In this document: positions 1 to 57,404 of the stretch, in pieces
Layout: every line of letters begins with the position of its first letter
How positions within the stretch are numbered: the stretch's first letter is position 1
Assembly: GCF_000737315.1 (NCBI RefSeq)
Contig: NZ_JMCB01000020.1
Coordinates: 1 to 64,000, forward strand
DNA from: Hyalangium minutum
GTDB lineage: Bacteria > Myxococcota > Myxococcia > Myxococcales > Myxococcaceae
DNA: 64,000 nt
Direction of reading: 5' to 3'
The notes under the pieces: model-generated
What the model was told of the DNA's origin: nothing
Databases searched by the model: none
The model's input: the letters and a program-made list of their open reading frames with translations, nothing else
Translations under genes and position numbers: made by a program

Positions 1-439
1 GAACTCCGCGCCCATCGGTCAGCAGACTCCTCTTGGTGCCCGTCTTGGCGCGGTCGGTCGGGTTGGGGCCGGTCTTCTGCCCTCCCAGCGGGGCCTTGGT
101 CATCGCCCCGTCCACGCTCATCCACTGCCAGTCGATGCCCACCAGAGCGTCGTATGCCTCCAACCCCAGGCGCCAGAACTCCAAGAACACTCCGGCCGTC
201 AGCCACTCGCGGAACCTGCGGTAGGCCGAGGACGGGTGGCAGATGCCGGTGGCTTTCAACGCGTGCCACTGCATCCCCGTGCGCAGCACCAGCAGGATGG
301 CTTCCATGGCGGACCGGTCCGGCACTCTCGGGTTATGGCACCCCAGTGGATGCGGCGGCCTGGGCGGCAGCAGGGGCTCTATCTTGGCCCACAGCTCCTC
401 TGGCATCCTTCAGCCGTCATCTCTCTTCGCTATTCCCAC
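1..439 (-). CDS. IS5-family transposase, N-terminal part (DUF4096 plus first DDE Asp); 3'-partial; in-frame TGA at 410-412 before Met 406
   Basis: Own translation: VGIAKRDDG*RMPEELWAKIEPLLPPRPPHPLGCHNPRVPDRSAMEAILLVLRTGMQWHAL...WQWMSVDGAMTKAPLGGQKTGPNPTDRAKTGTKRSLLTDGRGV. Confidence 0.9.
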
Positions 440-506
440 TCGAATCTTCCTCCTTCACCTTGTAACCCATCAGGTAGGGTCTTTTCTTCCCTACCGAGAT
501 AGGCAC
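1..506 (-). mobile_element. IS5-family insertion sequence, 5' part (runs off the window); probable left end at 506 with TTA target at 507-509
   Basis: Transposase frame on - strand. End sequence GTGCCTATCTCGG follows TTA, resembling IS1031-group ends with TWA targets. The host gene resumes immediately at 507. Confidence 0.75.
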
Positions 507-849
507 TAAGGTGGACATTGCGTATCAGACAGCACCCACGCTGCAAGGGCCGCCGTCCCCACGCCGGGGGCTGCCTGCCCTGAAACTCCCCCCGCACATT
601 CGCTCACCCGAGATTCCCTCTTACCTCGGGTGGCTGAACTACTGGTCGGCTGCTGCCGCAAAAGCCATCGGGTTCCCAGACCCGGCCCGAGACGCTGAGC
701 TGCTCTCGCGGGCGCGGCGCACGCCATCGGGCGGGTGGGTTGTGCCGCTCACGGCTGCGCCGCTCGATCTCGACAACCCCGTCCACCTGGACGCGCTGAA
801 GCGGGCCTATGAGCGCTTCCCGGAGATCGGCGGGCGCTCGGCACTGTGA
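507..849 (+). pseudogene. 3' fragment of a DUF5953-family gene interrupted by the IS
   Basis: C-terminal family signature LGWLNYWSAAAAKAIGFPDPARDAELLSRARRT..GGWVV.LT..PLDLDNP.HLDALKRAYERFPEIGGR; the N-terminal half is missing. Confidence 0.75.
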
Positions 850-879
850 CCGGGCAGCTCGGCTGTTAGAGTCTCGCGG

Positions 880-3072
880 ATGCGTGGGGTGGGGGTCCTG
901 TTCGCGTTGCTGCTGTCCACTTCACTCGCTGCGTCCGAGCGGGTGAAGACGGTGCTCGTGTTCGTGCCGGAGGACGGCATGGTGCCGTCCATCGCGGATT
1001 TCACCCGAAGCTTCCATCTGACGATGCTCGGCGAGCGCCAGAAGCCCGTCACCGTCAACATCGAGTACCTGGACATGGGCTGGTTCCAGGGCGCGGACTA
1101 CGATCGAGCCCTGCACGAGTTCTACCGCTCCAAATACCGGGAGCAGCGTCCCGAGGCCCTCGTCGTCTTCGCGGATGCGTGCCCCTTCGTGCTCAAGCTG
1201 CAGCAGGAGCTGTGGCCGCAGGTGCCGCTGCTCGCCGTCCTCAATGACAAGCCGCTGGTGGAGGCCCTGCCCGAGAGTGCCTTCATCCGAGGAAACTGGG
1301 CGGACCTCGACGTCCCGGGGACCGTGAGGATGGCCCTGCGGCTCCTGCCCAGCACCCGCCGCGTCGCCCTTGTCCTGGGCTCCAGCCAGCGAGAGCTCGC
1401 GGCCTGGGACTTCGTTGAGAGCGAGGTCCGAGGGGCCGCGCCGGACCGGGAATTCATTGGGCTGAGGGGGTTGACCCTGGAGCAGTTGCGCCAGCGGGTG
1501 CACACGCTCCCCGAGGACACCGTGGTCATCCTGGTGGGCTTCATGCAGGACGCCCAGGGCCAGAGTCTCGTGGGCCGGGATGTGTTGACGCAGCTGCACG
1601 CGGAGGGAAGCCCCCCCATCTTCAGCGTCCACAAGACGATGCTGGGCAGCGGAATCGTCGGAGGCGCGCTGCTGGACTACGAACTGCTAGGCCAGCAGGC
1701 CGCGAAGCGCACCCTCCAGCTGCTCAAAGGGGCGCCGCTGTCGAGCCTGCCCACCGGCGCCTTCGACACAAACCTGGTCGCCTTCGATGACCGGGAGCTG
1801 CAGCGCTGGCACATTCCCGACAGCCGGTTACCTCCAGGCGGCCGGGTGTTCTTTCGCGAGCCAGGCCTATGGGAGCGCTACCGGTGGCAGGTGACGGTGG
1901 CCGTGGGAGCGGGGCTGTTACAGGCGGTGCTCATCCTGGTGCTGCTGGTGGAGCGGAGGCTGCGCAGGGTGGCGCAGCGGCTGAACGCGGCGGTGCTGGA
2001 CTCGCTGCCGGGCTCGGTGGCCATTCTGGACAGGAATGGGGTGGTGCTCAGAGCCACACCCGCACCGGAGCGGCCCGAGAGCTTGGGCGGACTGCCCGCC
2101 GGAAAGCTGCTGGCGCCAGGGGCCGCGTACCTGGAGGCCTTCCGCGAGGCGGCGCGTTCAGGGCACCCCGAGGTGGAGGGGGTGGCCTCGCTGCTGCAAG
2201 ACGTGCTCGCGGGCCGGGCCAGCGAGGGAGCCCTGGAGTTCCGAGGCTTCGCGCCGGACCGCTGGCTGGAGCTGCGTGCCCGGCGGCTGGATTTGCCCGA
2301 GGGAGGAGCGGTGGCGGCGCTGGTGGACGTGACGGCGCGGCGCAGGGCGGAGCTGGAGGCCCGGCAAGCGCGAGACGAGCGAGCGCACCTGGAGCGAGTG
2401 TCGGCGGTGGGGGAGCTGGGGGTATCCATCGCGCACGAGCTGAACCAGCCGCTGGCGGCCATCCTCACCAATGCGGAGACCGCGCAGCGTCTGTTGCAGC
2501 GCTCACCCACGGACATGGGGCTGCTGCGGGAGATGCTCCAGGACATCATCGCCGACGACAAGCGGGCCGGAGAGGTCATCCGGCACATGCGGGCGCTGCT
2601 GAAGAAGGAAGGTGCGGCGGAGGGCACGCACGATCTCAACGAGCTGGTGGGACAGGTGGTGCGCCTGGTGGGCAATGACGCGCAGCTGCGCGGTGCGGTG
2701 CTCTCGTTGCGGCTGGCGGACACAGCCTTGCGGGTGAGAGGGGACGGGGTTCAACTGCAGCAGGTGGTGCTCAACCTGATCATCAACGCGCTGGATGCGG
2801 TGGGCCCATGCCCGCCCGGGGAACGGCAGGTGTGGGTGCGCACCCAACGGACGGACGGGCACGTGGAGCTGGCCGTGGAGGACACGGGCGTGGGCTTGAG
2901 CCCGGAGGTCCAGAAACGTCTGTTCGAGCCATTCTTCACCACCAAGCCAACGGGGCTGGGCATGGGGCTGTCCATCAGCCGCTCCATCCTTGAGGTGCAT
3001 CAGGGCCGGTTGCAGGCGGAGTCTCGGCCGGGACGCGGCACTGTGTTCCGCTGCTCCCTGCCCGCTGCGTGA
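880..3072 (+). CDS. Membrane sensor histidine kinase (ABC substrate-binding-like periplasmic domain, TM, PAS-like, HisKA, HATPase)
   Basis: Signal/TM at N-terminus, second TM near aa 340-360, H-box SIAHELNQPL, N-box NLIINALDA, G boxes DTGVG, FFTTK, GLGMGL. Confidence 0.93.
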   Translation: MRGVGVLFALLLSTSLAASERVKTVLVFVPEDGMVPSIADFTRSFHLTMLGERQKPVTVNIEYLDMGWFQGADYDRALHEFYRSKYREQRPEALVVFADACPFVLKLQQELWPQVPLLAVLNDKPLVEALPESAFIRGNWADLDVPGTVRMALRLLPSTRRVALVLGSSQRELAAWDFVESEVRGAAPDREFIGLRGLTLEQLRQRVHTLPEDTVVILVGFMQDAQGQSLVGRDVLTQLHAEGSPPIFSVHKTMLGSGIVGGALLDYELLGQQAAKRTLQLLKGAPLSSLPTGAFDTNLVAFDDRELQRWHIPDSRLPPGGRVFFREPGLWERYRWQVTVAVGAGLLQAVLILVLLVERRLRRVAQRLNAAVLDSLPGSVAILDRNGVVLRATPAPERPESLGGLPAGKLLAPGAAYLEAFREAARSGHPEVEGVASLLQDVLAGRASEGALEFRGFAPDRWLELRARRLDLPEGGAVAALVDVTARRRAELEARQARDERAHLERVSAVGELGVSIAHELNQPLAAILTNAETAQRLLQRSPTDMGLLREMLQDIIADDKRAGEVIRHMRALLKKEGAAEGTHDLNELVGQVVRLVGNDAQLRGAVLSLRLADTALRVRGDGVQLQQVVLNLIINALDAVGPCPPGERQVWVRTQRTDGHVELAVEDTGVGLSPEVQKRLFEPFFTTKPTGLGMGLSISRSILEVHQGRLQAESRPGRGTVFRCSLPAA

Positions 3073-4029
3073 TCAGGAGACTGTCACGGGTGTGTACACG
3101 CGCGAGGCGGCACGGCTCAGCCCCAGCAGTCCCACGCCCGCCAGCAGCAAGGGGATGCACAGCCACTGCTCCAGGGTCAGTCCCAGCTGGAGGGGATCGC
3201 CCAGGGAGGGCTCGCGGAAGAAATCCACGCCCAGCCGTAGGACGCCATAGCCCAGGAGAAACACGCCGCTGAGGACTCCCTCCGCCAGCGAGCGCATGCG
3301 CTGCCGCAGCGCGAAGAGCACGCAGAACAGCACGGCGCCCTCCAAGAGCGCGGCATAGAGCGCCCAGGGGTGGCGGGGGTTGAGGATGCGGACCAGCTCG
3401 TTCATCAGATCCGGGTTGATGTGGGCCAAATCCATGATGGCGCCGTGGTGGGCTGGCAGCTCTTCCGCGGCCATCTCGGTGGGCAATGCGGGCGTGAATG
3501 CGGGCAGATGGACCTCGAGCGGAAAGCGCAGGGCCCAGGGGACGGAGGTGGTGCGTCCAAATGCCTCACCCGTCATGAAGTCGGCCAGCCGGCCCAGCAG
3601 CATTCCCAATGGCGCCACCACCGCCAGGTGATCTGTCAGGTTCAGGAAGGACACGTGATGCTTTCGCGCTTGGAACGCGGTGAAGACAATCAAGCCCAGC
3701 AGCCCACCGAAGAACGAGGCCTGATTCACGTTCATCTTCAGCAGGAGCGACAGATCCCCGGAGACGTGGGGCCAGTCATAGAGGAAGGCGTACCCCAGCC
3801 GGCCGCCCGCGAGCACGCCCAGCAGGGCCCCGAAGATGACGAACTCGGGGAGCTCGCGCCGCTGGAGGGCCAGCTGTCCTCGGGCGGAGAAGCGGCGCAG
3901 CAGCCACAGGGCCAAGGCAAAGCTTGCCAGATAGGCCAGCCCATGCCACCGAAAGGTGAACACGTCTTGGCCACCCTCCTGGTAGCGGTAGACGTTGGCG
4001 GGCAGATCGAGAAGAGGGAAGGTGGACAT
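3073..4029 (-). CDS. lgt: Prolipoprotein diacylglyceryl transferase-like protein, divergent at catalytic residues
   Basis: RWHGLAY, GGRLGY, SFFGG, GRLADFMTGEAFGR, RHP, GYGVLRLGVDFFREP follow the Lgt motif order; start chosen at Met 4029. Confidence 0.85.
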   Translation of the reverse strand: MSTFPLLDLPANVYRYQEGGQDVFTFRWHGLAYLASFALALWLLRRFSARGQLALQRRELPEFVIFGALLGVLAGGRLGYAFLYDWPHVSGDLSLLLKMNVNQASFFGGLLGLIVFTAFQARKHHVSFLNLTDHLAVVAPLGMLLGRLADFMTGEAFGRTTSVPWALRFPLEVHLPAFTPALPTEMAAEELPAHHGAIMDLAHINPDLMNELVRILNPRHPWALYAALLEGAVLFCVLFALRQRMRSLAEGVLSGVFLLGYGVLRLGVDFFREPSLGDPLQLGLTLEQWLCIPLLLAGVGLLGLSRAASRVYTPVTVS

Positions 4030-4128
4030 GGCGCGAACCGGGAGGCTGAGGGGAGACACGAACCACGAGGGCGTATGCAAAGTCAGATACGCCCTCGCGG
4101 CTCATTTCACGGCTGGAAGACCAGTGGA

Positions 4129-4512
4129 CTAGTTGAAGTCCGCGGGGTTGATCGACGTGGGTTGCTTACCCACGATCTTCCTGAACTCGAGGACGTAGGC
4201 GCCATTCGAGTCCTTCGAGATTCTCTGGTACCGCAGCCCGTCCAGCTTGCCCTCGTCGACCAGCTTGTTCCAGTCGTTGCCATGCACGCGGATGGTCGCC
4301 ACCGGCGCGCAGCAGTTGTACTTCACGTCCTTGGTGATGACACCCGAGGACCAGGTAATGGTCGCGCAACTCTGCTCGTAGGCGCCCAAGGCCACGGTCG
4401 CGCCGCCCTGGTTGAGGGTCTGGAAGCAAGCGGGCTCAGAGGTCTGGCCCACGGCGGTGCCCTGCATGAGGCAGAGACCCACCACGGCGGCTGCACCAAT
4501 GTACTTTTTCAT
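4129..4512 (-). CDS. Secreted hypothetical protein, 127 aa, Cys-containing
   Basis: Signal peptide MKKYIGAAAVVGLCLMQGTAVG; upstream purine-rich RBS-like sequence. Confidence 0.75.
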   Translation of the reverse strand: MKKYIGAAAVVGLCLMQGTAVGQTSEPACFQTLNQGGATVALGAYEQSCATITWSSGVITKDVKYNCCAPVATIRVHGNDWNKLVDEGKLDGLRYQRISKDSNGAYVLEFRKIVGKQPTSINPADFN

Positions 4513-4566
4513 GTCTTGGTTTCCCTGAGAGGTAGATGAATGAAAGAAGAGATGCTGTGAGAAGGG

Positions 4567-4800
4567 TTACAGCTCCACCGGCTTGGTGGACTCTTTCCCC
4601 TTCACTTCTTGCTGCTTCTCCTTCTCCTCGCTGCCCGGCTTGACGTCGCGCTTCTCGACGGGCAGCGGCTTGGAAGCCTCGGGGGCCTTGGTCTGCGCCG
4701 GAGCCTTGGAGGTATCCTTGGCAGGAGGCGTGGCCGGCTTATCGGCGGCCAAGGCAGACAGGGAGAGGCAGAGCAACGAGGCGCTCAACATTTTCTTCAT
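4567..4800 (-). CDS. Small secreted Lys/Pro/Ala-rich low-complexity protein, 77 aa
   Basis: Signal peptide MKKMLSASLLCLSLSALA; AAGGAG RBS at 4810-4815 (- strand). Confidence 0.75.
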   Translation of the reverse strand: MKKMLSASLLCLSLSALAADKPATPPAKDTSKAPAQTKAPEASKPLPVEKRDVKPGSEEKEKQQEVKGKESTKPVEL

Positions 4801-4866
4801 GCGGTGACGCTCCTTGGGGTTGAGGAGCCCGCGTTCTGCCAGTTCACCCTCTCTTGGGACCAGTTG

Positions 4867-4966
4867 GATCTTTGTTGAATTGACAGGCGAACGCCAAAGT
4901 GCCTTCAGCCGAGTCTCGCGCCATGCCCAGGCACAGTCTGAGTTCACTGTCAATTCAACAAAGATC
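4867..4966. repeat. 100-bp element bounded by a perfect 20-bp inverted repeat GATCTTTGTTGAATTGACAG
   Basis: 4867-4886 is the exact reverse complement of 4947-4966; 60-bp spacer. Confidence 0.95.
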
Positions 4967-5009
4967 TGAATGGGCTTGCTCCGAGGCGCGGCTTATTGAG
5001 TCGCCTCGC

Positions 5010-5336
5010 ATGAGCGACAAGGTCATTCACGTCTCGGAGAAGAATTTCGATGCGGCCGTGCTGGAGCAGGAGGGCCCGGTCCTGGTCGATTTCTGGGCGG
5101 ATTGGTGCGGGCCCTGTCACAGGCTGGCTCCCATCCTGGAAGAGGTCGCCAGCACGTACGCAGGCAGATTGACCATCGCCTTGCTGAACATCGAAGAGAA
5201 CCGCGCCATCGCTCAGGAAGAGGGTGTCCGGCGCATCCCAACGCTGCTGCTGTTCAGGCGGGGGGAAGTGGTCGCGGTCAAAGAGGGCGTACCGTCTCCA
5301 GCGCAGTTGAGCGAGTTCCTGGAGCCCCACCTGTAG
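5010..5336 (+). CDS. trxA: Thioredoxin
   Basis: PVLVDFWADWCGPC active site and IPTLLLF cis-Pro loop; 108 aa; may be a paralogue rather than the main copy. Confidence 0.92.
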   Translation: MSDKVIHVSEKNFDAAVLEQEGPVLVDFWADWCGPCHRLAPILEEVASTYAGRLTIALLNIEENRAIAQEEGVRRIPTLLLFRRGEVVAVKEGVPSPAQLSEFLEPHL

Positions 5337-5356
5337 TCACACAGAGGAGATACACA

Positions 5357-5704
5357 ATGGCAGAGACTGTCTATTTCACGTTCATGCAGCGGCCGGGTCA
5401 GGAGTTCATCTTCGCGTTGACCGACCCTGCGAGGATTCAGCAGGCCCGCGATATCCTGTCTGGGAAGGAGACGATGGCGGTCCATGTCATGGGCCGAATC
5501 GTGAAGCGCCAGGCGCCCTACAACCCCAGGTGGTCTTACCATTTGGATCCCGCCACGATCGCCTTCTTCCCCATGGCCATTGAAGTGTGTGATGCCAACA
5601 TGGGGTACGTCGAGGAGCACCTGGACGAGGCCTGTGGTGCTTTCCTCCCGGGCTGCCACTGGTGTCCGTGGGATTCCAAGCTGGTGAGGGAAGTCACGCC
5701 CTGA
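5357..5704 (+). CDS. BP74-related (calmodulin-binding-like) small protein
   Basis: GAGGAG RBS at 5344-5349; motifs HVMGRIVK, YNPRWSYHLDP, AIEVCDA, WCPW. Confidence 0.6.
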   Translation: MAETVYFTFMQRPGQEFIFALTDPARIQQARDILSGKETMAVHVMGRIVKRQAPYNPRWSYHLDPATIAFFPMAIEVCDANMGYVEEHLDEACGAFLPGCHWCPWDSKLVREVTP

Positions 5705-5742
5705 TCTTTGAAAGACTTGCATCCACGAATCGGGAGCATGAC

Positions 5743-6939
5743 ATGGGAAAGACGACAGGGACTGCGCAGTTCGCCGATGCGCCACCCGGAGATGATTTCT
5801 ACACGCCGCCCAGCCCTCTCTTGGGGACGCACGGTGATGTGATCTGGAGGCGGCCGCTCAGTGGGATTGCCGCGCTGAAGGCGGCGGGCACCAACGAGCT
5901 GGTGCTCTACCGCTCGGACGCGGCCGACGGAGCGCCGATCGCGGTCTCGGGGATCATCGCGCTGCCGAAGACACCGGCACCCGCGGGGGGCTACCCCGTG
6001 GTCAGCTGGGCACACGGAACGCTGGGCCTCGGTGACAAGTGGGCGCCGTCTCGGGACTCGGAGGCCATCGCCGCCGAGCAGCCAGAGCATCACGCCATCA
6101 ACCAGGCCCCCCATGTCCTGCTCAACGCGCTGCTGGAGCAGGGCTTCGCCGTGGTGATGACGGACTTCGAGGGGATGGGGACGCCGGGGTCTCATCCCTA
6201 CCTGCTCGGCGTCTCCGAGGCGCGTGGCGTGCTCGACATCGTGCGCGCCGCGCGGCAGCTGTACCCGGAGATCTCGAACCGGTTCGTGATCGCCGGACAC
6301 TCCCAGGGCGGTCAGGGGGCGCTGTTCGCGGCGCACCTCGCCGCGAGCTGGACACCGGAGCTTCAGTTGCACGGGGTCGCGGCGCTCGCGCCGGCGTCAC
6401 ACGTCACGGACATCCTCCTCGAGGGCAGCCGCTACCCCAAAGAGTTCCCAGGCTTCGCCTTCACTCCGCTCCTGCTGACCGGCGCGATTGTAGGCGCCAA
6501 GGCAAGCGGCCGTCCGATCGACCCGCGGAAGATCCTCACCGACAGGGCGTTTGCGTTGTTCGAGGTCTCCGGCGACAAATGCCGTGTCGAGCTCAGCGAT
6601 GACAAGCTCTGGGGGGGCATCCCCGGCACCGAGCAGTTCCGAGGGAATCTGACCGACGAGCCCAACGAGGATCAGAAGGAGTTCCTGCGTCAGCTCGACC
6701 TCACCAACCCCGCGCTCACCATCCCCTGTCCGATTCGTATCTCGCATGCCCAGCCGGACCCACGCATCGCCATCGCCGACAGCCACAAGCTTGTCGAGGA
6801 GCTGACGGGGCTCCGTAACGACATCACGTATCGAATCTACCGCGAGGTGGCTGACCACTTGGTGGGCCCTCACTTCGGCGTCATCGCCACGGATACGCCC
6901 GCCCTCTCCGCCTGGGTCCGGCTGCAGCTGGGCAGCTGA
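5743..6939 (+). CDS. Secretory-lipase-like (LIP family) alpha/beta hydrolase
   Basis: WAHGTLG oxyanion region, TDFEGMGTPGSHPYL, nucleophile elbow GHSQGG. Confidence 0.88.
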   Translation: MGKTTGTAQFADAPPGDDFYTPPSPLLGTHGDVIWRRPLSGIAALKAAGTNELVLYRSDAADGAPIAVSGIIALPKTPAPAGGYPVVSWAHGTLGLGDKWAPSRDSEAIAAEQPEHHAINQAPHVLLNALLEQGFAVVMTDFEGMGTPGSHPYLLGVSEARGVLDIVRAARQLYPEISNRFVIAGHSQGGQGALFAAHLAASWTPELQLHGVAALAPASHVTDILLEGSRYPKEFPGFAFTPLLLTGAIVGAKASGRPIDPRKILTDRAFALFEVSGDKCRVELSDDKLWGGIPGTEQFRGNLTDEPNEDQKEFLRQLDLTNPALTIPCPIRISHAQPDPRIAIADSHKLVEELTGLRNDITYRIYREVADHLVGPHFGVIATDTPALSAWVRLQLGS

Positions 6940-6941
6940 AC

Positions 6942-8195
6942 TCAGTGCACAGCCCCTTGAGACGGGGCGAGGGGGAGCGTGACGGTGAAGCAAGTCCCGT
7001 TCTGGTACGAGCTCGTGACCGTCACCTTCCCTCCGTGCGCTTCAGCAAAGCCTCTGACCAGGAGCAACCCCAGTCCCCATCCCTTGTGGCCGCTGTCCGT
7101 CGCGGACCTCGAGCGGTGAAATGGCTCGAAGATGGTCTGCAACTCGCCCTCGGGGATCGGGTTGCCTTGATTCTTCACCCGAAGCGCCACGGTGTCCTGG
7201 CTCCGATCGAGCAACACTTCGATGGGAGTCTCCGGTGCTCCGTACTTTGCCGCGTTCGACGCCAGGTTCTCGATGATCCGGCGGAGCCCGTTCGGGTCCG
7301 CGAACATCGGGATCGAGCCTTCCGACTTCAGGACGAAGCGATCCCGATGAACCTCCGCGAGCTCCTGGAGTGTCTCAGCCGTGAGCTCCTGGAGGTCGCA
7401 GGCGCTCTGCTTCAGCGACACCAGCTTTCCTGCTCGGATGGTGCTCGCATCCAGCAAGTCCTGGATCATGCGCTCCGCGCGGTCCAGACTTTGGGAGACG
7501 CGCGTCACCGCCGTCTGGACGGTAGGCAGCTCCGCGTGGCGTCTCCCGAGCAGCTGCAGCTGCAGCTTGGATGACGTCATGGGCGTGCGCAGATCATGGG
7601 TCAGCGCCGCGACGAAGGTCTCCCGGAGACGCTGCTCGGCTTTCAGCTTTTGGATCTGCTCGCGGAGGTGGATCTCCGTCATGATGGAAGCGGTCAGCTC
7701 TTTCATGACCGTGAGATCCTGCTCGGTCCACTCGCGCACCTTGGGTTCGATGGCGCAGAAGGTCCCCAGCACGTGTCCGTCAGGGTTGATCAACGGAAGC
7801 ACGATGATGGCAACGATTCCCCAGGGGCCGGTCGACGGGTGGATTCTCAGGAAGGGGTCGGCCAAAGCGTTCGACGAGATGATCGACTCGCCCTCGAGCG
7901 TGTAGCGGCAAAGAGAGGCATCGATCGGGAGCGTTCGAGTCTCCTTGAACGGCGAGGGGAGGCCGAAATCCGCTTTGAAGAACTGTCTGTCAGCATCCAC
8001 CAGGGAAAAGATGGTCAACGGAACATGCAGGAGCTGGGCTGCCAGGCGCGCCAGCCGATCAAAGGCTTCTTCACGAGGCGTGTCCATCAGCCCCGTGTCC
8101 TGGATCGCCTGCAGACGGTTGGGGTCGACAAGGCGCACGTTGCACGTCTGCGTCCGCTGGGTTGCTACTGGATCGAGTTCGCCCAAGAACTTCAT
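6942..8195 (-). CDS. Cytoplasmic GAF-domain histidine kinase
   Basis: GAF motif LMDTPREEAFDRLARLA; H-box LTHDLRTP; NLASNAAKYG; GWGLGL. Confidence 0.92.
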   Translation of the reverse strand: MKFLGELDPVATQRTQTCNVRLVDPNRLQAIQDTGLMDTPREEAFDRLARLAAQLLHVPLTIFSLVDADRQFFKADFGLPSPFKETRTLPIDASLCRYTLEGESIISSNALADPFLRIHPSTGPWGIVAIIVLPLINPDGHVLGTFCAIEPKVREWTEQDLTVMKELTASIMTEIHLREQIQKLKAEQRLRETFVAALTHDLRTPMTSSKLQLQLLGRRHAELPTVQTAVTRVSQSLDRAERMIQDLLDASTIRAGKLVSLKQSACDLQELTAETLQELAEVHRDRFVLKSEGSIPMFADPNGLRRIIENLASNAAKYGAPETPIEVLLDRSQDTVALRVKNQGNPIPEGELQTIFEPFHRSRSATDSGHKGWGLGLLLVRGFAEAHGGKVTVTSSYQNGTCFTVTLPLAPSQGAVH

Positions 8196-8222
8196 GCTGG
8201 GACCTTAACCGATGGCAGGGGC

Positions 8223-8430
8223 TCACTCAGCAGGTAAGCTGCCAGGCCTCAGCCTCGTTGCCCACTGAACGTGGGGCACCTCTTCGAGGGCTTCACGGGC
8301 TTCGTAGGGGGCACCGAGCGCCGCAAGGCCCGCTCGAAGCTCCGCCTCCAGGGCCGCTGCCGAAGGGTCGTGGTCCTCCGCGTGGCGCTGGAGCAGCTGG
8401 CGGAGGATGGAGCGCAGCGGCTCGGTGATT
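8223..8430 (-). pseudogene. Start-less remnant resembling the C-terminal tail of a myxobacterial Ser/Thr kinase
   Basis: Own translation ITEPLRSILRQLLQRHAEDHDPSAAALEAELRAGLAALGAPYEAREALEEV...*; no in-frame start codon back to the stop at 8508-8510. Confidence 0.5.
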
Positions 8431-8455
8431 GGATCTTTGTTGAATTGACAAGCGA
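8429..8455 (+). repeat. Second direct copy of the 4864-4890 motif
   Basis: TTGGATCTTTGTTGAATTGACA identical at 4864-4885 and 8429-8450, followed by RGCGA in both. Confidence 0.95.
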
Positions 8456-8501
8456 CGGGGCTTGGTAGAGGGCCGGTCCGGCCTGTGATACGGAATACCC
8501 C

Positions 8502-9119
8502 ATGACCTCAGCGCGCTCCACGCTGCTCGTGGTGGACGACGACCCTTCGGTCCTTCGCAGCCTCGAGCGCATGTTCCAGGTGGAAGGGTATGCCGTGGAG
8601 TGCTTTGCCCATCCGCGCCAATTGCTGGCACGGGGAGCAGGCTCTGGGCCCCTGTGCGTGGTGATGGACCTGCGCATGCCGGAGCTCAACGGGCTGGAGC
8701 TTCAGGAGGAGCTTCACCGGCAGGGCTTCCGGCACCCCATCATCTTCATCAGCGGGCACGGGGACATCCCCGCCGCCGTGAAGGCCATGAAGGCCGGGGC
8801 CGTGGATTTTCTGCCCAAGCCGTTCAGCTCCGCGGACCTGCTGGCTGCCGTGGAGCGCGCACTGGCCCAGGAGCGCGAGGCCATGGCTCGGGCCCAGGAG
8901 CACGAAGTCCTGCGGGCCCGGTTCTCCGCGCTGTCCCCTCGCGAGTGGCAGATCTGCCAGTTCGTGGCGCAAGGGCTGCTCAACAAGCAGATCGCCGCTG
9001 AGCTCGGCACTGCCGAGCAGACAGTCCGTCTTCAGCGCAGCCGTGTCATGGAGAAGCTGGCCGTGGGCTCGGTGGCGGAGTTGGTGCGGCTCCTGGAGCA
9101 GCTCAACTCACGGGCCTGA
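8502..9119 (+). CDS. FixJ/TodT-family response regulator (REC plus LuxR HTH)
   Basis: VVDDD, VMDLRMP phosphoacceptor, FISGHG, AMKAGAVDFLPKP, LSPRE...GLLNKQIAAELG. Confidence 0.95.
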   Translation: MTSARSTLLVVDDDPSVLRSLERMFQVEGYAVECFAHPRQLLARGAGSGPLCVVMDLRMPELNGLELQEELHRQGFRHPIIFISGHGDIPAAVKAMKAGAVDFLPKPFSSADLLAAVERALAQEREAMARAQEHEVLRARFSALSPREWQICQFVAQGLLNKQIAAELGTAEQTVRLQRSRVMEKLAVGSVAELVRLLEQLNSRA

Positions 9120-9161
9120 CCGGTCGCCAAACCTACGGTTTCTACTGAGAAACGGTATTCC

Positions 9162-9181
9162 CGTCAATTCAACACAAACTC
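9162..9181 (-). repeat. Degenerate inverted copy of the TGTTGAATTGAC motif
   Basis: GTCAATTCAACA at 9163-9174 is identical to the core of the 4947-4966 copy. Confidence 0.75.
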
Positions 9182-9283
9182 TATATCCAGGCTCGGTTGA
9201 GTTCTTTACGCTGAGTGCGTGTTGCCCCTCTCCGAAGTACGCCGTCCCTGCTGCGTGAGCCAGCGCTGCTCCCGAGTTCCGTG

Positions 9284-11932
9284 ATGACGAAGGACTGGCC
9301 CAGTGCGGCAGAGACCGACTTGACGTTGGTGAGGGGGGAAGGCCGCGAACCGGCCGCGCGCAGCAGGAGGATTCCTCCGTCCCTCACCATCCGGTTCCAG
9401 GAACTCCAGTTTGCCGGCGAAGGCGCAATGGGGACGGTCTACCGGGCGGTGGATCCCCAGCTAGGGCGCCCCATCGCGCTCAAGCTCCTCAAGAGCGATG
9501 ATCCGGTGCTCTGCCGGAGGTTCATCGCCGAGGCGCGGGCCCAAGCCCGTATCGAGCACGAGCACGTGTGCTCCGTCTATGAGGCCGGGCTGGCGGAGGG
9601 TGAGCCCTACATCGTGATGCAGTACATCGACGGCGAGCCGCTGTCGCGCGTGCGTGAGCGCATGACGCTCGAGCAGCAGGTGAAGCTGCTCCAGGAGGTC
9701 TCCCTGGCCGTGCACGAGGCTCACCGGCTGGGGATGATTCACCGCGACCTCAAGCCGGGGAACATCCTCGTGGAGCAGCGCGAGGACGGCACCTGGAAGC
9801 CGTATGTCGTGGACTTCGGTTTGGCGCGCGAGGTCGCCGAGCAGGGGCATACCCAGACGGGGGAAGTGCTCGGAACGCCCGCGTATATGTCGCCCGAGCA
9901 GGCCAATGGGGACGTGCGCCAGCTGGACCGCCGCTCGGACGTGTACTCGCTGGGGGCCACGCTGTACGACGTCATCGCTGGGCGGCCTCCCTTCGTCTCG
10001 GAAGTCCCTTGGAAGCTGCTGTTGATGGCGTCGATGGAGGATCCGCCACCGCTGGGGCAGGTGAAGCCGGGGGTGCCGAAGGACCTCGAGACCCTCGTGA
10101 TGAAGTGTCTGGAGCGGGAGCCGGTACGTCGCTACGACTCGGCTCGGGCGCTCGCGGAGGATCTGCGACGCGTCCTGGACGGCGATCCCATCCTCGCGAG
10201 GCAGGCCTCCTGGCGGGAGCGGCTCTGGAAGAAGGCCCGCAGGCACAAGCTGCTCACGGTGAGCTTGATGGCGCTGGGACTCTCGGCGCTCGGGCTCGGC
10301 GTGGTGTGGGTGGAGGCGGAGCGGCACGCGGCGAAGCAGGCGCGGCTCGCCCGGGAGTTGGGCGAGAGCGTGAAGGAGATGGAGCTGTTCCTGCGCACGG
10401 CGTACGGACTGCCCCTGCATGACGTGGAGCGGGAGCGGGACATGGTGCGCGCCCGGCTCGAGGAGATCGCCGTGCACATGCGCGCCTCGGGCGAGGCCGG
10501 CCTCGGGCCCGGCCACCACGCACTGGGCCTGGGACAGTTCGCGCTCGGTGAGCCTGGGCAGGCCCGCGAGCACTTGGAGCAGGCGCTGGCGGCCGGCTAC
10601 ACGTCGGCGAGCCTCGAGTATGCGCTGGGGCGGGCACTCGGAGAGCTGTACCGGCGCGCGCTGGAGGACACCCGGCGCATCAGCTCCCCGGAGGAGCGGA
10701 GGAAGAAGGTGGCGCAGCTGGACCAGGAGCTGCGCGAGCCCGCGCTCCGCCACCTGCGGGCGGCGATGGGGGAGAGGCTCGAGGTGCCCGAGTATGTGGA
10801 GGGGCTGATCGCGCTGTACGAGGGCCACCACGAGGTGGCGATCGCCCGGGCCAAGGCCGCCTTCGCCAAGGCGCCCTGGATGTACGAGCTGAAGAAGCTC
10901 GAGGGGGATGCGCTGTTCGCCGAGGGCAGCAAGTACCGGCATGACGCGGCGTTCGACTACGAGAAGATGAAGGGTTACTTCGAGCGGGCCGCGCAGGCCT
11001 ACCAGGTGGCGTCGGAGATGGGCCGCAGCGATCCCTCCCTCCACCGGGCCGAGTGCGAGCTCTGGGAGAAGATGGGGTGGGCGGACTTCTCGCGGGGCCT
11101 GCCGCCCGGCCCGTCCTTCAATGCGGCCGAGGCGGCGTGCAGCCGCGCGGTGCGCTCGAGCTCGAGGGAGGGCGGAGCCTTGGTGCAGCGCGCCCTCGTG
11201 CTCCTGGCACAAGTGCACGTGCTGAGCGGCAAGTTCTCGGAGCACATGCTGCCCCTGGTGGACGAGGCGCTCTCGGTGGCGGAGGCGGGCAGGCGCGCGC
11301 GCCCCCAGGATGTCATGGCCCACTATGCGCTGGCCCAGGCCCTCTTTCTTCGGACCCGGCTCCTGTACGCGCTGGAGCGCGAGGCCTCCATAGAGCCCGC
11401 CATTCAGGCGTACCAGCAAGTCCTCGAGCTGGAGCCGGGCTTCACCTGGGCGCACAACGAGCTGGGCGAGGCCTACCTGTGTGAGGCCCGGAGAACCCTG
11501 GAACTGGGACAGGAGGCCACAGCGTTGCTGGACAAGGCCGTCCGCGAGTACGAGCAGGCCCTGGCGATCGATCCCTCGTTCGCGCTGCCCGTGGGGGGCT
11601 TGCTGGATGCGGCGACGGCCCGGCTTACGGCGGCAGTCGCTCAAAAGCGCGAAGCACCTGAGGCGCTCCAGGCCTTCTCCCAGGCGCTGGCGCGGCTGGA
11701 GCAGAGTGGCGCCGGCCCCCAGATTGTCGCGCTGTGGAAGGCGCGCGGGCACCGGCTCCTCGCCCACCATGACTTCGTGCTGGGCCGGGATCCCCGCCCG
11801 TCCCTGGCGCGCGCCTTCGAGGTGCTCCGCGCCGCGGATGGAGACCCGCCGAAAGCCCCCTGGCTGTTCAAGGAGTGGCGGCTCATCCAGGAGTTCCAGC
11901 AACAGATGCAGACGTCACCCCTTGAAAAATGA
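9284..11932 (+). CDS. Membrane Ser/Thr protein kinase with C-terminal TPR-like helical domain
   Basis: GEGAMGTVY, ALKLL, HRDLKPGN, DFGLA, GTPAYMSPEQ; TM LLTVSLMALGLSALGLGVVWV; start uncertain (9215 or 9284). Confidence 0.93.
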   Translation: MTKDWPSAAETDLTLVRGEGREPAARSRRIPPSLTIRFQELQFAGEGAMGTVYRAVDPQLGRPIALKLLKSDDPVLCRRFIAEARAQARIEHEHVCSVYEAGLAEGEPYIVMQYIDGEPLSRVRERMTLEQQVKLLQEVSLAVHEAHRLGMIHRDLKPGNILVEQREDGTWKPYVVDFGLAREVAEQGHTQTGEVLGTPAYMSPEQANGDVRQLDRRSDVYSLGATLYDVIAGRPPFVSEVPWKLLLMASMEDPPPLGQVKPGVPKDLETLVMKCLEREPVRRYDSARALAEDLRRVLDGDPILARQASWRERLWKKARRHKLLTVSLMALGLSALGLGVVWVEAERHAAKQARLARELGESVKEMELFLRTAYGLPLHDVERERDMVRARLEEIAVHMRASGEAGLGPGHHALGLGQFALGEPGQAREHLEQALAAGYTSASLEYALGRALGELYRRALEDTRRISSPEERRKKVAQLDQELREPALRHLRAAMGERLEVPEYVEGLIALYEGHHEVAIARAKAAFAKAPWMYELKKLEGDALFAEGSKYRHDAAFDYEKMKGYFERAAQAYQVASEMGRSDPSLHRAECELWEKMGWADFSRGLPPGPSFNAAEAACSRAVRSSSREGGALVQRALVLLAQVHVLSGKFSEHMLPLVDEALSVAEAGRRARPQDVMAHYALAQALFLRTRLLYALEREASIEPAIQAYQQVLELEPGFTWAHNELGEAYLCEARRTLELGQEATALLDKAVREYEQALAIDPSFALPVGGLLDAATARLTAAVAQKREAPEALQAFSQALARLEQSGAGPQIVALWKARGHRLLAHHDFVLGRDPRPSLARAFEVLRAADGDPPKAPWLFKEWRLIQEFQQQMQTSPLEK

Positions 11933-26600: not shown

Positions 26601-26956
26601 GCCCAGACGGTGCCATCCTCGAGGACGGCGAGGCTGTGGCGCGCCCCAGCCGCCACCGTCACCACGTGCTCCAGCCCGGGCACCTGCGCGGGCGTGGTGT
26701 GGCTGCTCAGCGTCGCGTCGCCGAGCTGGCCAAAGGTGTTGTCACCCCAGGCCCACAGGGCTCCGTTCAGCGCCACATATAAGGAGTGTTGGTAGCCCGC
26801 GGCCATGCGCGGCGGTGGTGGCGGCGGCAAGGCCGGCGGCGAGGGCTTGCCCCAGGAGGGCCCCGGCATCCCCGCGGCGGCGGAGCTGGTGATGAGCCAG
26901 AGACCCAGGAGTCCCACCCACGCGCCCCTCGCCCTGACTGCGCTCGCTATCCGCAT
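23663..26956 (-). CDS. Secreted RCC1-repeat protein with 21 repeats (three 7-bladed propellers)
   Basis: 21 counted DGT.WAWG.N..GQLG units, with a linker after repeat 7; N-terminal signal and Pro-rich spacer. Confidence 0.92.
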   Translation of the reverse strand: MRIASAVRARGAWVGLLGLWLITSSAAAGMPGPSWGKPSPPALPPPPPPRMAAGYQHSLYVALNGALWAWGDNTFGQLGDATLSSHTTPAQVPGLEHVVTVAAGARHSLAVLEDGTVWAWGDNRYGQLGDGTLARRVSPVQVLGLPKVRAVAAGYEHSLALGQDGTLWAWGFNGSGQLGDGSNLQRATPVKVPLMGAVSIAAGRAHSLAVTRDGGVWSWGENVHGQLGSAAPLNRYTPDWIPSVHGVKAVAAGGRHSLALLEDGTVWTWGANTTGQLGDGSLYPSRPPAPVFGLSQVVSIAAGGAFSLAVTATGDVYAWGDNSTGQLGEGSRATRTSPVLIASGSNIVSVTAGYAHALSSSSDGTLQAWGDNGQGQLGESTGLAFSVIPIIVHGGWPQSTPPLVQRVVRSATGLEHSLVVRSDGTVWAMGLNDRGQVGDGTYLPRNTPVQVADLTNIQAVAAGYNHSLALRSDGTVWAWGDGFSGQLGNGAGTFQTTPEQVLGLTNAVAIAAGFGFSLAVRSDGTAWAWGDNLYGQLGNGTTSSAFTPVQVVGLSSIVSVSAGIGHTLAVRADGTAWAWGNNANTQLGDGTTAPRSIPVQVPGLANVRALSAGESHSLAVLEDGTVWGWGSNQAWQLGMIGHASLPTQLPNFTGAAAVAAGERHSLILLADGSVWGLGDNVHAQLGPGSSTYFPVQIPGLPAITALASNWRHTIAVDTSGTFWGWGDTGRGQLGVGTGAQVSPTQVPGLTGQRALAAWDGVSASVGLDGRLWTWGWNTSGQLGDGTTFSRGTPAPVPSLDSVQSVTTGDGHTLALRSDKTLWAWGTNLYGQLGIGSRLQEEAPVRVASLANVKAMEAEGRHTLAVLEDGSVWAWGNNSHGQLGNGTMDQEAHPLPSQVPGLTSGVDVTTGWDFSAALRADGTVWTWGTNIWGQLGDGTRTNRPTAGPVLGLTDVIQITAGGSSMLALKSDGTVWGWGNSFLDAPWDGTHPPGSVPLQIQGLSAVQQVARGDGFFMALKTDGTLWAWGINFIGELGDGTITPRSSPVQILTGVTAVEAGTFHSLAVRTDGTVWAWGDNAYGALGQEPSRAMPLSIPLP

Positions 26957-57195: not shown

Positions 57196-57404
57196 CCGGC
57201 CAACTCACCCGGCTACCCCCTCACTGGTAGACGGGCGGGGCGAACTGCAATTCGTCTGGTTCTTGTTCCGCGAGCCAAGCCATGAGCAAAGCGCGGGCCA
57301 ATCGGTAAATCCTTGAATTGACGAGAGTGCAGTGAAGCCGCCGGGCCGAGTGGAGTGGACATGCGTATTCCAGGTGTCCTCGTTTGGGACACCCCCCTCG
57401 CGCT

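What the first reader, a model, noticed from the sequence alone, without database searches (positions are those of the whole stretch)
4864..9181. Unexplained AT-rich motif family (core TGTTGAATTGAC): MITE-like ends or a regulon operator
Seen: perfect 20-bp inverted repeat at 4867-4886/4947-4966 around 60 bp; a 22-bp identical direct copy at 8429-8450; a degenerate inverted copy at 9163-9174; a 10-bp core at 57313-57322. The 8429 and 9163 copies bracket the FixJ-like gene in inverted orientation. All copies are intergenic in a GC-rich genome. Hypothesis A: terminal repeats of a miniature element. TTTGTTGAAT matches IS903-group ends (GGCTTTGTTGAAT), and the 8429 copy sits at a gene-truncation point, which would make 8432-9181 a regulator-carrying cassette. 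Hypothesis B: binding site of the FixJ-like RR, controlling itself, trx, the secreted ORF and the downstream kinase. No target-site duplication is visible around 4867-4966.
Basis: partly seen in the sequence, partly recalled or inferred. Interest (0 to 1): 0.72.

Follow-up and report, generated by a model that had tools for sequence, protein, structure and literature searches.

The report
Conserved two-component-system promoter/operator module
The AT-rich repeat is real, but it is most likely a conserved regulatory DNA module (an operator/promoter of about 50 bp) tied to a FixJ-like two-component system and its lipase/esterase target genes in myxobacteria, and it is not a miniature transposon.

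Summary
GATCTTTGTTGAATTGACA occurs three times exactly (4867-4885 +, 4948-4966 -, 8432-8450 +) and once in degenerate form (9162-9189 -); permuted motifs give 0.0 exact hits. The window is Hyalangium minutum contig JMCB01000020.

The MITE/IS reading is not supported. There is no target-site duplication, relatives carry at most about 4 exact copies per genome, no matching transposase is present, and copies sit at conserved positions next to the same gene families in several genera.

The operator reading is supported by comparison:
- 5 of 8 myxobacterial genome hits to the 19-mer lie within 1.5 kb of an orthologue of the window's response regulator (RR).
- In 10 RR-orthologue loci fetched without using the motif, the 13-mer core is exact 5 times (0.0 expected).
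- Every copy has a gene reading away from its GATC side. These are repeatedly the LIP lipase (or P178-trx-BP74-LIP operon), a carboxylesterase, an S15 hydrolase and the downstream Ser/Thr kinase.
- A TAT-type -10-like box lies 34 nt away in most copies.

The inverted pair A/B is two such modules serving divergent genes; the same pair exists in a close relative. The "RR cassette" is an accident of rearrangement: the truncated kinase gene at 8229-8428 is real.

RR binding and transcription start sites are untested. Interest is moderate.

The parts
4860..4912 (+). Module copy A. 19-mer 4867-4885; 13-mer core TGTTGAATTGACA 4873-4885. Its GATC side faces the 77-aa secreted ORF (ATG at 4800).
   Evidence: (nhmmer E 1.3e-10)
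4917..4973 (-). Module copy B. Core 4948-4960; 19-mer 4948-4966; distal block CCCAGGCACAGTC 4926-4938; CCATTCA flank to 4973. Its GATC side faces trx.
   Evidence: (E 3.1e-12)
4994..4999 (+). -10-like TATTGA, 34 nt after copy B's core and 11 nt before the trx ATG. Equivalent TAT boxes sit at the same offset in 8 other copies.
   Evidence: inference, no TSS data
8428..8480 (+). Module copy C (core 8438-8450). Its right flank (AAGCG..GGGGCTTG) is homologous to the A' arm of relative L012. Its TTGACA side faces the RR (ATG 51 nt after TTGACA).
   Evidence: E 6e-9; 94% over 36 nt to L012 A'
9149..9189 (-). Degenerate copy D. Core CGTCAATTCAACA on the + strand at 9162-9174; TATATC box at 9182-9187. 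It lies upstream of the Ser/Thr kinase gene and is conserved in H. versicolor and H. rubrum.
   Evidence: (E 0.012)
8502..9119 (+). FixJ/StyR-like response regulator (REC + GerE HTH); the proposed binder of the motif.
880..3072 (+). 730-aa sensor histidine kinase (HK730). It is adjacent to the RR orthologue in relatives. In this window a 5.4-kb block separates the two.
5010..6939 (+). trx - BP74_N - LIP lipase operon; the proposed target of copy B.
4567..4800 (-). 77-aa secreted, Lys/Pro/Ala-rich ORF; the proposed target of copy A.
9284..11932 (+). Ser/Thr kinase with TPR; the proposed target of copy D.
8229..8428 (-). 3' remnant of a Ser/Thr kinase pseudogene, truncated at the outer edge of copy C.
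6942..8195 (-). GAF histidine kinase; the next intact gene on the GATC side of copy C (242 nt away).

Best explanation
The motif is the core of a conserved cis-regulatory module of about 50 bp. Together with its promoter-proximal flank it spans about 95 bp. It belongs to an uncharacterised myxobacterial two-component system made of a 730-aa sensor kinase and a FixJ/StyR-like response regulator.

Read towards the regulated gene, the layout is: CCCAGACACACTC - N11 - TGTCAATTCAACA - AAGATCT - CAATGG - N20 - TATRRR - gene.

Proposed mechanism (inferred):
- The phosphorylated RR binds the imperfectly palindromic 13-mer (half-sites TGTTGA / TGTCAA), centred near -53 of a weak-(-35) sigma-70-type promoter.
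- It activates the gene on the GATC side. In this window those genes are trx-BP74-LIP (copy B), the 77-aa secreted ORF (copy A) and possibly the GAF kinase (copy C).
- In the RR-STK spacer (copy D) the site lies only 7 nt from a TATA-like box, so binding there would overlap the core promoter and probably acts differently, for example as a repressor.
- The TTGACA side with its TGTG..CTGG block faces signalling genes (HK730, the RR, a hybrid kinase, STK-TPR) whenever a gene reads away from it. This suggests an ancestrally bidirectional control region between a hydrolase operon and the two-component operon.
- The perfect inverted repeat at 4867-4966 is two modules placed face to face, one for each divergent gene.

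What is shown: the repeats; their linkage to the RR/HK genes; their orientation rule; their conservation at orthologous promoters; and the extent of homology between copies.

What is inferred: which protein binds, the sign of regulation and the promoter geometry.
For: (1) Linkage to the regulator, genome-wide scan. A scan of 185,579 species genomes with the 19-mer gave 8 myxobacterial loci. About 0.001 would be expected at 68% GC (own estimate). Five of the eight, from five genomes, lie within 1.5 kb of an orthologue of this RR, mostly together with an HK730 orthologue.

(2) Linkage to the regulator, motif-independent sample. In 10 RR-orthologue loci fetched through the protein only (196 kb), the exact 13-mer occurs 5 times against 0.0 for 300 permuted motifs. 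With <=2 mismatches it occurs 8 times against 0.29.

(3) Conserved targets.
- The motif lies upstream of LIP, or of P178-trx-BP74-LIP, in H. minutum (B), H. versicolor (L005), H. rubrum (L035), Stigmatella (L015) and A. violaceum (L016). Between genera only the motif is alignable in these spacers.
- The P178 family sits on the GATC side in L010, L012 and L016.
- Other GATC-side genes are a carboxylesterase (L001), an S15 hydrolase (L004, L017) and a patatin-like protein (L009, weak match).

(4) Footprint. In the RR-STK spacer of three Hyalangium species, only the core and the TATA box are conserved.

(5) Orientation rule. Every copy has a gene reading away from its GATC side. This includes about 8 independent co-directional spacers, where orientation is informative.

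(6) Promoter-like box. A TAT-type box sits at offset 34-35 in 9 copies.

(7) The inverted pair recurs. A close relative (L012) has the same inverted pair, 58 nt apart, with a homologous right flank fused to a different gene.

(8) Recognition helix. It is identical (TAEQTVRLQRSRVMEKL) in six strong-motif Cystobacterineae loci and the two weak-motif loci, and differs by one residue at the helix start in L015. It is substituted in the three motif-less loci.

(9) Precedent. The RR is closest to StyR (1yio, 2.4e-47) and FixJ. StyR activates from a site about -40 and uses further modulatory sites (PMC2442086).
Against: - No binding or expression data exist, so the binder could be another protein.
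- The Polyangia MAG locus L003 has the exact 19-mer next to an RR whose recognition helix differs.
- Three RR-orthologue loci (L019, L032, L034) have no motif.
- 19/19 identity across genera, and 88-90% identity over 50 nt between non-orthologous copies, is more than a simple transcription-factor site normally needs.
- The dyad symmetry is weak: 4 of 6 half-site positions.
- The consensus scan found no canonical sigma-70 promoter in 4400-9500. TTGACA has no -10 partner at 16-18 nt.
- Copy C abuts a truncated gene, and in L009 the module abuts a decayed RR fragment. A mobile element would also produce both.
- The rest of the H. minutum genome could not be scanned.
Confidence: 0.68

Rival explanations
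1. Miniature inverted-repeat transposable element, or remnants of one (Correia-, REPIN- or IS903/IS5-derived). The 114-bp palindrome 4860-4973 would be an intact element. Solo copies would be half-elements, and 8432-9181 would be a cassette carrying the RR.
For: - A/B has 27-nt terminal inverted repeats around 60 nt, and the same pair exists in L012.
- Homology between copies has sharp edges at -15/+34.
- Copy C abuts a truncated kinase gene, and the L009 copy abuts an RR fragment.
- CTTTGTTGAAT resembles the IS903 end. This is recalled from memory and was not tested.
- An IS5-family transposase fragment lies at window 1-406.
Against: - No target-site duplication.
- Only 4 exact copies in all of H. 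versicolor and 1 in each of the other four myxobacterial genomes hit.
- Copies sit at conserved positions relative to the same gene families across genera.
- The pair's homology with L012 runs 43 nt beyond the right arm, so the inverted repeat does not bound the unit.
- Near-perfect sequence identity between genera whose neighbouring proteins are 70-78% identical indicates selection, not neutral relics.
- The RR and the D site occur in relatives without C.
- The missing half of the truncated kinase is not beyond D.
- blastn against 72,556 plasmids at E<=10 finds nothing.
- The sequence next to the transposase fragment (window 405-510) shows no similarity to the motif.
Confidence: 0.08
2. A reused (putative mobile) core promoter that works without the RR. 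The T-rich stretch plus TTGACA would act as an UP-like element and consensus -35 for the housekeeping or an alternative sigma factor. The module would have been copied upstream of unrelated genes.
For: - TTGACA is the consensus -35, and TGTG lies exactly where an extended -10 (TRTG) would lie for a 17-nt spacer.
- In a Chloroflexi MAG the same 19-mer is followed after 17 nt by TATAAT (L008).
- L001 and L005 are 89% identical over 92 nt upstream of unrelated genes. This meets the operational criterion for putative mobile promoters (PMC3575422).
- HK730 and STK starts lie 30-61 nt after TTGACA in L010, L033, L012 and L014.
Against: - The hexamer at the -10 position is CTGGGN or ATGGGC. It lacks the essential A at position 2 and T at position 6, and the scan found no promoter.
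- Half of the copies point TTGACA into the 3' end of a convergent gene (L003, L004, L017, L018, L016, D).
- A plain promoter does not explain the tight linkage to one RR/HK family.
- No sigma-factor gene is consistently nearby.
Confidence: 0.15
3. Operator for a different DNA-binding protein, encoded elsewhere or a global regulator. Its sites would merely be enriched in this gene neighbourhood.
For: - Motif-less RR loci exist (L019, L032, L034).
- L003 has an exact motif next to an RR with a divergent recognition helix.
- 19-26 nt of near-invariant sequence suggests more than one protein contact.
Against: The RR is the only DNA-binding protein consistently encoded within a few kb of the motif across genera.
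Confidence: 0.08

Closest known systems
Operators of FixJ-subfamily response regulators (StyR STY boxes at PstyA; TodT boxes; FixJ at fixK/nifA)
   Same: - The RR here is most similar to StyR and FixJ.
- As with StyR, sites occur upstream of a sigma-70-type promoter at activator-like distance, and there are additional differently placed sites (PMC2442086).
- The sites are linked to the regulator's own locus.
   Different: - The sequence is unrelated to the STY/Tod boxes as I recall them. That comparison was not tested here.
- The dyad is weak.
- The conserved unit is about 50 bp, not about 16-20 bp.
- The cognate kinase has an unknown 330-aa N-terminal sensor domain with no Pfam match.
- The targets are lipase/esterase-type hydrolases, a thioredoxin and kinases, not an aromatic-catabolism or nitrogen-fixation operon.
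- Binding is untested.
Putative mobile promoters / promoter reuse (Matus-Garcia, Nijveen and van Passel; PMC3575422)
   Same: >=80% identity over >=50 nt upstream of unrelated genes, both within one genome (L001/L005/L007 in H. versicolor) and between genera (L001 vs L017, 90% over 51 nt). There is no associated transposase.
   Different: Here a candidate cognate regulator is physically linked. The targets are functionally coherent and the positions are conserved. Much of the pattern can therefore be vertical descent plus local rearrangement, not mobility.
Correia elements / REPINs (small palindromic repeats that carry promoters)
   Same: - The A/B unit is about 114 bp with about 27-nt inverted ends.
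- On the proposed reading each arm's promoter faces outward, towards its flanking gene.
- Single arms also occur.
   Different: - No TA or other target duplication.
- A handful of copies, not hundreds.
- No RAYT or transposase partner seen.
- The arms are not GC-rich REP hairpins.
- Homology extends beyond one arm.

Membership tests
MITE / IS-derived element (IS5/IS903-type) | Terminal inverted repeats bounding the unit | tested here: inconclusive
   A/B has 27-nt arms, 89% complementary. However, homology with the L012 pair continues 43 nt beyond the right arm. C and D share only the core.
MITE / IS-derived element (IS5/IS903-type) | Target-site duplication flanking the element | tested here: not met
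   The flanks of 4860-4973 (CTCTTGGGA / GCTTGCTCC) and of 8429-9189 show no direct repeat.
MITE / IS-derived element (IS5/IS903-type) | Many dispersed copies at unrelated sites | tested here: not met
   The 19-mer scan gave 4 exact copies in H. versicolor and 1 in each of four other myxobacterial genomes. Copies sit next to the same gene families. The H. minutum genome outside the window could not be scanned.
MITE / IS-derived element (IS5/IS903-type) | Autonomous partner element with the same ends | tested here: not met
   The sequence next to the only transposase fragment in the window (gene 1-406; adjacent sequence 405-510) shows no motif. blastn of A/B against the plasmid collection at E<=10 gave no match. 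A genome-wide check was not possible.
Response-regulator operator / local regulon site (FixJ/NarL family) | Located in promoter-bearing intergenic regions with a consistent orientation to a downstream gene | tested here: met
   All copies are intergenic, with a gene reading away from the GATC side 49-330 nt off.
Response-regulator operator / local regulon site (FixJ/NarL family) | Conserved at orthologous promoters while the surrounding spacer diverges | tested here: met
   RR-STK spacer in three Hyalangium species. LIP/P178 upstream regions in five species.
Response-regulator operator / local regulon site (FixJ/NarL family) | Genomic linkage or co-occurrence with the regulator gene | tested here: met
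   5 of 8 motif-ascertained loci lie within 1.5 kb of the RR orthologue. In RR-ascertained loci: 5 exact cores in 196 kb against 0.0 expected.
Response-regulator operator / local regulon site (FixJ/NarL family) | Dyad or repeated half-sites suited to an RR dimer | tested here: inconclusive
   TGTTGA-A-TTGACA is complementary at 4 of 6 half-site positions (read from the sequence). The D-type sites conserve mainly the left half.
Response-regulator operator / local regulon site (FixJ/NarL family) | Specific binding by the phosphorylated RR, and RR-dependent expression | not testable with these tools
   Needs EMSA, footprinting or DAP-seq, plus mutant transcriptomics.
Putative mobile promoter (PMP) | >=80% identity over >=50 nt upstream of genes without paralogous coding sequence | tested here: met
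   L001 vs L005 are 89% identical over 92 nt (COesterase vs LIP). L001 vs L017 are 90% identical over 51 nt. The homology does not enter the coding sequence. The criterion is from PMC3575422.
Canonical sigma-70 promoter | -35 and -10 hexamers 16-18 nt apart | tested here: not met
   The scan of 4400-9500 found none. The hexamer 17 nt after TTGACA is CTGGGN. On the GATC side there is a TATRRR box but no -35.
Structured RNA (Rfam) | Match to a covariance model | tested here: not met
   No Rfam hit at E<=1 in 4400-9400. The A/B hairpin (z = -5.3) follows trivially from the inverted repeat.

The most novel reading that the evidence does not exclude
The module is a portable, bidirectional, regulator-specific promoter cassette. 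It would be a discrete unit of about 50-95 bp that has been copied, by an unknown transposase-independent route, in front of unrelated genes within and between myxobacterial genera. Each copy would recruit its gene into the regulon of one FixJ-like two-component system. The module's edges would also act as preferred rearrangement breakpoints, as suggested by the truncated kinase at copy C, the decayed RR next to the L009 copy, and the same promoter fused to trx here but to P178 in a close relative.
Probability: 0.2. Interest if true: 0.65.

Novelty: new member of a known kind. Interest (0 to 1): 0.4.

Why it matters
If the RR binds this motif, an orphan-looking FixJ-like regulator in Hyalangium and its relatives gains three things at once: a defined operator, a predicted regulon and a testable link to its 730-aa kinase. 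The kinase has an unannotated sensor domain. The predicted regulon is the LIP lipase operon with thioredoxin and a BP74-like protein, carboxylesterase, S15 hydrolase, the P178 protein of unknown function, a Ser/Thr kinase and further histidine kinases.

The near-invariant 19-26 nt core can be used directly to scan myxobacterial genomes for regulon members.

It is also a clean example of the same regulatory module sitting in front of unrelated genes. That bears on how regulons grow by reusing promoters. It does not reveal a new kind of mobile element.

Tried and rejected
- **Metagenome scan with the 19-mer.** It gave 12 hits, all from 33-48% GC organisms with unrelated flanks. These are chance matches and add nothing. 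The two Chloroflexi hits in the genome scan are of the same kind.
- **Literature search for the motif string.** It returned only unrelated primers.
- **Rfam.** No match.
- **blastn of the A/B palindrome against plasmids.** No match, so the recalled IS903-end resemblance could not be substantiated.
- **Sigma-70 promoter and terminator scan.** Nothing found.
- **ECF-type and sigma-54-type promoter readings.** I considered both by eye and dropped them: the spacings do not fit, and no sigma gene is linked.
- **Invertible-switch reading.** A 60-nt segment between the inverted repeats is too short for inversion. The RR flanked by C and D was dropped because relatives have the RR and D without C.
- **RNA leader or sRNA reading.** Dropped because half the copies point into convergent genes and no covariation is seen.
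- **Site at 57311-57322.** Treated as chance.
- **Pfam and NCBIfam searches.** They gave no function for P178, the 127-aa ORF, or the HK730 sensor domain.


Full report
**What is in the window.**
The window is the first 64 kb of contig JMCB01000020.1 of assembly GCA_000737315.1. From memory this is Hyalangium minutum; the tool output names no organism.

The reported repeats are all present:
- GATCTTTGTTGAATTGACAG at 4867-4886 (+), with its perfect reverse complement at 4947-4966, 60 nt apart. The arms extend to 27 nt at 89% complementarity.
- TTGGATCTTTGTTGAATTGACA at 8429-8450 (+).
- A degenerate copy on the minus strand at 9160-9189 (TGGATATAGAGTTTGTGTTGAATTGACGGG).

I call these copies A, B, C and D.

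The exact 13-mer core TGTTGAATTGACA occurs 3 times in the window. 300 composition-matched permuted motifs give 0.0. The site at 57311 is indistinguishable from chance.

**Gene map.**

| Coordinates | Strand | Gene |
|---|---|---|
| 880-3072 | + | 730-aa histidine kinase (HK730) |
| 3073-4080 | - | Lgt |
| 4129-4512 | - | 127-aa ORF |
| 4567-4800 | - | 77-aa secreted ORF |
| (copies A and B) | | |
| 5010-5336 | + | thioredoxin |
| 5357-5704 | + | BP74_N protein |
| 5743-6939 | + | LIP-family lipase |
| 6942-8195 | - | GAF histidine kinase |
| 8229-8428 | - | coding remnant |
| (copy C) | | |
| 8502-9119 | + | REC+GerE response regulator (RR) |
| (copy D) | | |
| 9284-11932 | + | Ser/Thr kinase with TPR |

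**The motif elsewhere.**
A scan of one genome per bacterial species with the 19-mer gave 10 loci. Eight are myxobacterial:
- Hyalangium versicolor, four loci.
- Archangium lansingense, Vitiosangium, Myxococcus sp. CA023 and a Polyangia MAG, one locus each.

Two are Chloroflexi MAGs. The metagenome scan returned only low-GC organisms with unrelated flanks. This shows what chance hits look like and indicates that the Chloroflexi hits are chance.

In GC-rich myxobacteria this AT-rich 19-mer should essentially never arise by chance. My estimate is about 0.001 expected across the phylum.

Similarity between copies is not limited to the 19-mer. It runs from about -15 to +34 relative to the core. The consensus is CACCATTGA-GATCTTTGTTGAATTGACA-GRGGAANGGGAG-TGTGYCTGGG. 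Identity is 88-90% between copies that lie in different genera and next to different genes.

**Linkage to the two-component system.**
tblastn of the window's proteins against these loci shows that five of the eight myxobacterial loci carry an orthologue of the window's RR within 1.5 kb of the motif. Most also carry an HK730 orthologue.
- H. versicolor L010: motif, then HK730 38 nt later, then RR, then the STK.
- Myxococcus CA023 L004 and the Polyangia MAG L003: the motif sits just after the RR stop codon, in the same inverted orientation as copy D.
- Vitiosangium L009: the motif abuts a decayed RR fragment.

To remove the ascertainment bias, I fetched RR-orthologue loci through the protein alone.
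- In the ten loci of the statistical sample (196 kb), the exact 13-mer occurs five times against 0.0 expected. With <=2 mismatches it occurs eight times against 0.29.
- It is present in a metagenomic close relative (L012, RR 89% identical), Stigmatella (L015), A. violaceum (L016), M. landrumensis (L017) and C. fuscus (L018), and also in one H. rubrum paralogue locus (L035), fetched later and not part of the 196-kb sample.
- It is degenerate in the other H. rubrum paralogue (L014) and in A. lipolyticum (L033).
- It is absent from Polyangium (L019), Corallococcus (L032) and A. primigenium (L034).

**Orientation rule and target genes.**
In every copy a gene reads away from the GATC side. A gene reads away from the TTGACA side in only about half. 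In about eight independent co-directional spacers, where orientation is informative, the GATC side always faces the downstream gene.

The GATC-side genes recur:
- The LIP lipase, alone in H. versicolor L005, Stigmatella L015 and H. rubrum L035.
- LIP as part of trx-BP74-LIP (copy B here), or of P178-trx-BP74-LIP (A. violaceum L016).
- The P178 protein of unknown function (L010, L012, L016).
- A carboxylesterase (L001).
- An S15-family hydrolase (L004, L017).
- A weakly patatin-like protein (L009).
- A GAF kinase (L003).
- The Ser/Thr kinase (copy D).

Between genera, the only alignable part of the LIP upstream regions is the motif. In the RR-STK spacer of H. minutum, H. versicolor and H. rubrum, the conserved island is (T/C)GTC(A/T)ATTCAACAC followed by a TATA box.

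When a gene does read away from the TTGACA side, it is a signalling gene: HK730, the RR, a hybrid GAF kinase, or STK-TPR.

A paralogous, partly decayed version of the module sits in the STK-TPR / HK400-RR divergent spacer of a second family of loci.

The simplest history is an ancestral bidirectional control region between a hydrolase operon and the two-component operon, as still seen in L010. Duplication and rearrangement would have produced the rest.

**Promoter geometry (inference).**
Read towards the GATC-side gene, nine copies carry a TAT-type hexamer starting 34-35 nt after the core:
- TATGAA: L001, L005, L007.
- TATAGG: L002/L009.
- TATAGC: L016.
- TATAGA: L018.
- TATGAG: L012 B'.
- TATTGA: copy B.

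There is no recognisable -35. This would put the core at about -53 of an activator-dependent promoter.

In the D-type sites (copy D, its two Hyalangium orthologues and L003), a TATA(G/T)N box lies only 7 nt from the core. That is a different and possibly repressive geometry.

In the other direction, TTGACA followed by TGTG at the extended -10 position looks promoter-like. However, the hexamer where a -10 should be is CTGGGN, and the consensus scan found no sigma-70 promoter. Transcription start sites are needed to settle this.

**The inverted pair and the "cassette".**
The A/B palindrome is two modules face to face, each with its GATC side towards its own gene (the 77-aa ORF and trx).

The close relative L012 has the same arrangement: exact 19-mers 58 nt apart, between a ricin-type lectin gene and P178. 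Its right flank is homologous to that of copy B as far as TTATGAGTC..GCCT. After that point the H. minutum sequence runs straight into trx, whereas L012 runs into P178.

Copy C's right flank matches the A' arm of L012 (94% over 36 nt).

Window 8229-8428 is the 3' end of a Ser/Thr kinase gene that is intact in L012.

Relative to H. versicolor and H. rubrum, where HK730 and the RR are adjacent, H. minutum has 5.4 kb (3073-8430) between them. The region upstream of HK730 has been replaced by DUF5953 and an IS5-family transposase fragment.

C and D do not delimit a unit. Relatives have the RR without C, and they have the D site without C.

**Why it is not a MITE.**
- No target-site duplication.
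- At most four exact copies per genome in the genomes that could be scanned.
- No partner IS. The sequence next to the window's only transposase fragment shows no similarity to the motif.
- No match to plasmid-borne elements.
- Conserved positions relative to the same gene families across genera.
- Near-invariant sequence at divergences where neutral DNA would be saturated.

All of these argue for a selected regulatory element.

What remains of a "mobile" flavour is that the module meets the operational definition of a putative mobile promoter: >=80% identity over >=50 nt upstream of unrelated genes (PMC3575422). L001 and L005 are 89% identical over 92 nt. In addition, truncated genes abut the module twice. 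I give a truly portable cassette about 20%.

**Who binds.**
The RR is a FixJ/StyR/TtrR-type regulator. Its closest solved structures are StyR (1yio, E 2.4e-47) and FixJ (5xso). It scores below the FixJ equivalog cut-off.

It is the only DNA-binding protein consistently encoded near the motif.

Its recognition helix is identical in six strong-motif Cystobacterineae loci and the two weak-motif loci, and differs by one residue at the helix start in L015; it is substituted in the three motif-less loci. This tracks phylogeny, however. The Polyangia locus L003 is an exception: it has the exact motif next to a divergent helix.

StyR provides a precedent for one activating site near -40 plus modulatory sites elsewhere (PMC2442086).

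RR binding is therefore the best inference, but it is not shown.

**Verdict.**
- Hypothesis A is rejected.
- Hypothesis B is supported by comparative genomics but untested biochemically.
- This is a new, uncharacterised instance of a familiar kind of element. It has an unusually long and invariant core and shows signs of promoter reuse. Interest is moderate.

Noticed in passing
window 1-850: The contig starts inside an IS5-family transposase fragment (DUF4096, 1-406, minus strand), followed by a DUF5953 ORF (511-849). This replaces the motif-bearing region that lies upstream of HK730 in H. versicolor (L010). HK730 here has therefore lost its module.
   Followed up: partly
window 3073-8430: A 5.4-kb block (Lgt, 127-aa ORF, 77-aa ORF, A/B, trx-BP74-LIP, GAF kinase, kinase remnant) separates HK730 from its RR. 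The two genes are adjacent in H. versicolor, H. rubrum, C. fuscus and A. primigenium.
   Followed up: partly
L012 9037-9573; L010 3166-3693; L016 7033-7566: A conserved protein family of 168-187 aa (called P178 here) has no Pfam or NCBIfam match. It always lies on the GATC side of the motif. It is absent from the window, where the same promoter flank is fused directly to trx.
   Followed up: partly
L008 1860-1878 (Anaerolineales MAG): The identical 19-mer is followed after exactly 17 nt by TATAAT. In that organism it reads as an UP-like stretch plus a consensus -35/-10 promoter. This is probably a chance occurrence of the 19-mer.
   Followed up: no
L009 4357-4481: A decayed fragment of a second RR copy (aa 27-68, two pieces) lies immediately after the TTGACA side of the motif in Vitiosangium. 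An intact RR lies 1.5 kb away on the other side.
   Followed up: partly
window 8478-8501 and the equivalent positions in L012, L018, L034: A short conserved stretch, CTGTG(A/G/T)TA(C/G), lies about 12-20 nt upstream of the RR start codon in four species, independent of the motif. It may be a proximal promoter or a translation signal.
   Followed up: no
window 19900-23150 vs 27690-30930: A segmental duplication, offset by about 7.79 kb, with 71-85% identity (families D8-D11, D14, D20).
   Followed up: no
window 23700-26800: An array of about 150-nt coding repeats, at least 16 units (motif ...GTTGTCGCCCCAGGCCCAGACGGTGCC...), inside a very long minus-strand ORF. It looks like a beta-propeller/RCC1-like repeat protein. 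This is a guess and was not tested.
   Followed up: no
window 41990-44150: Tandem 141-nt repeats (9 copies) followed by 102-nt repeats (4 copies) in a long ORF. The pattern is Cys/Asp-rich, as read from GTCGCCGCA / GTCGTCGCA.
   Followed up: no
window 880-1920: The N-terminal 330 aa or so of HK730 (signal peptide plus a presumed periplasmic sensor domain) match no Pfam family even at E<=5. The shorter paralogous kinases (about 400 aa) lack this domain.
   Followed up: partly
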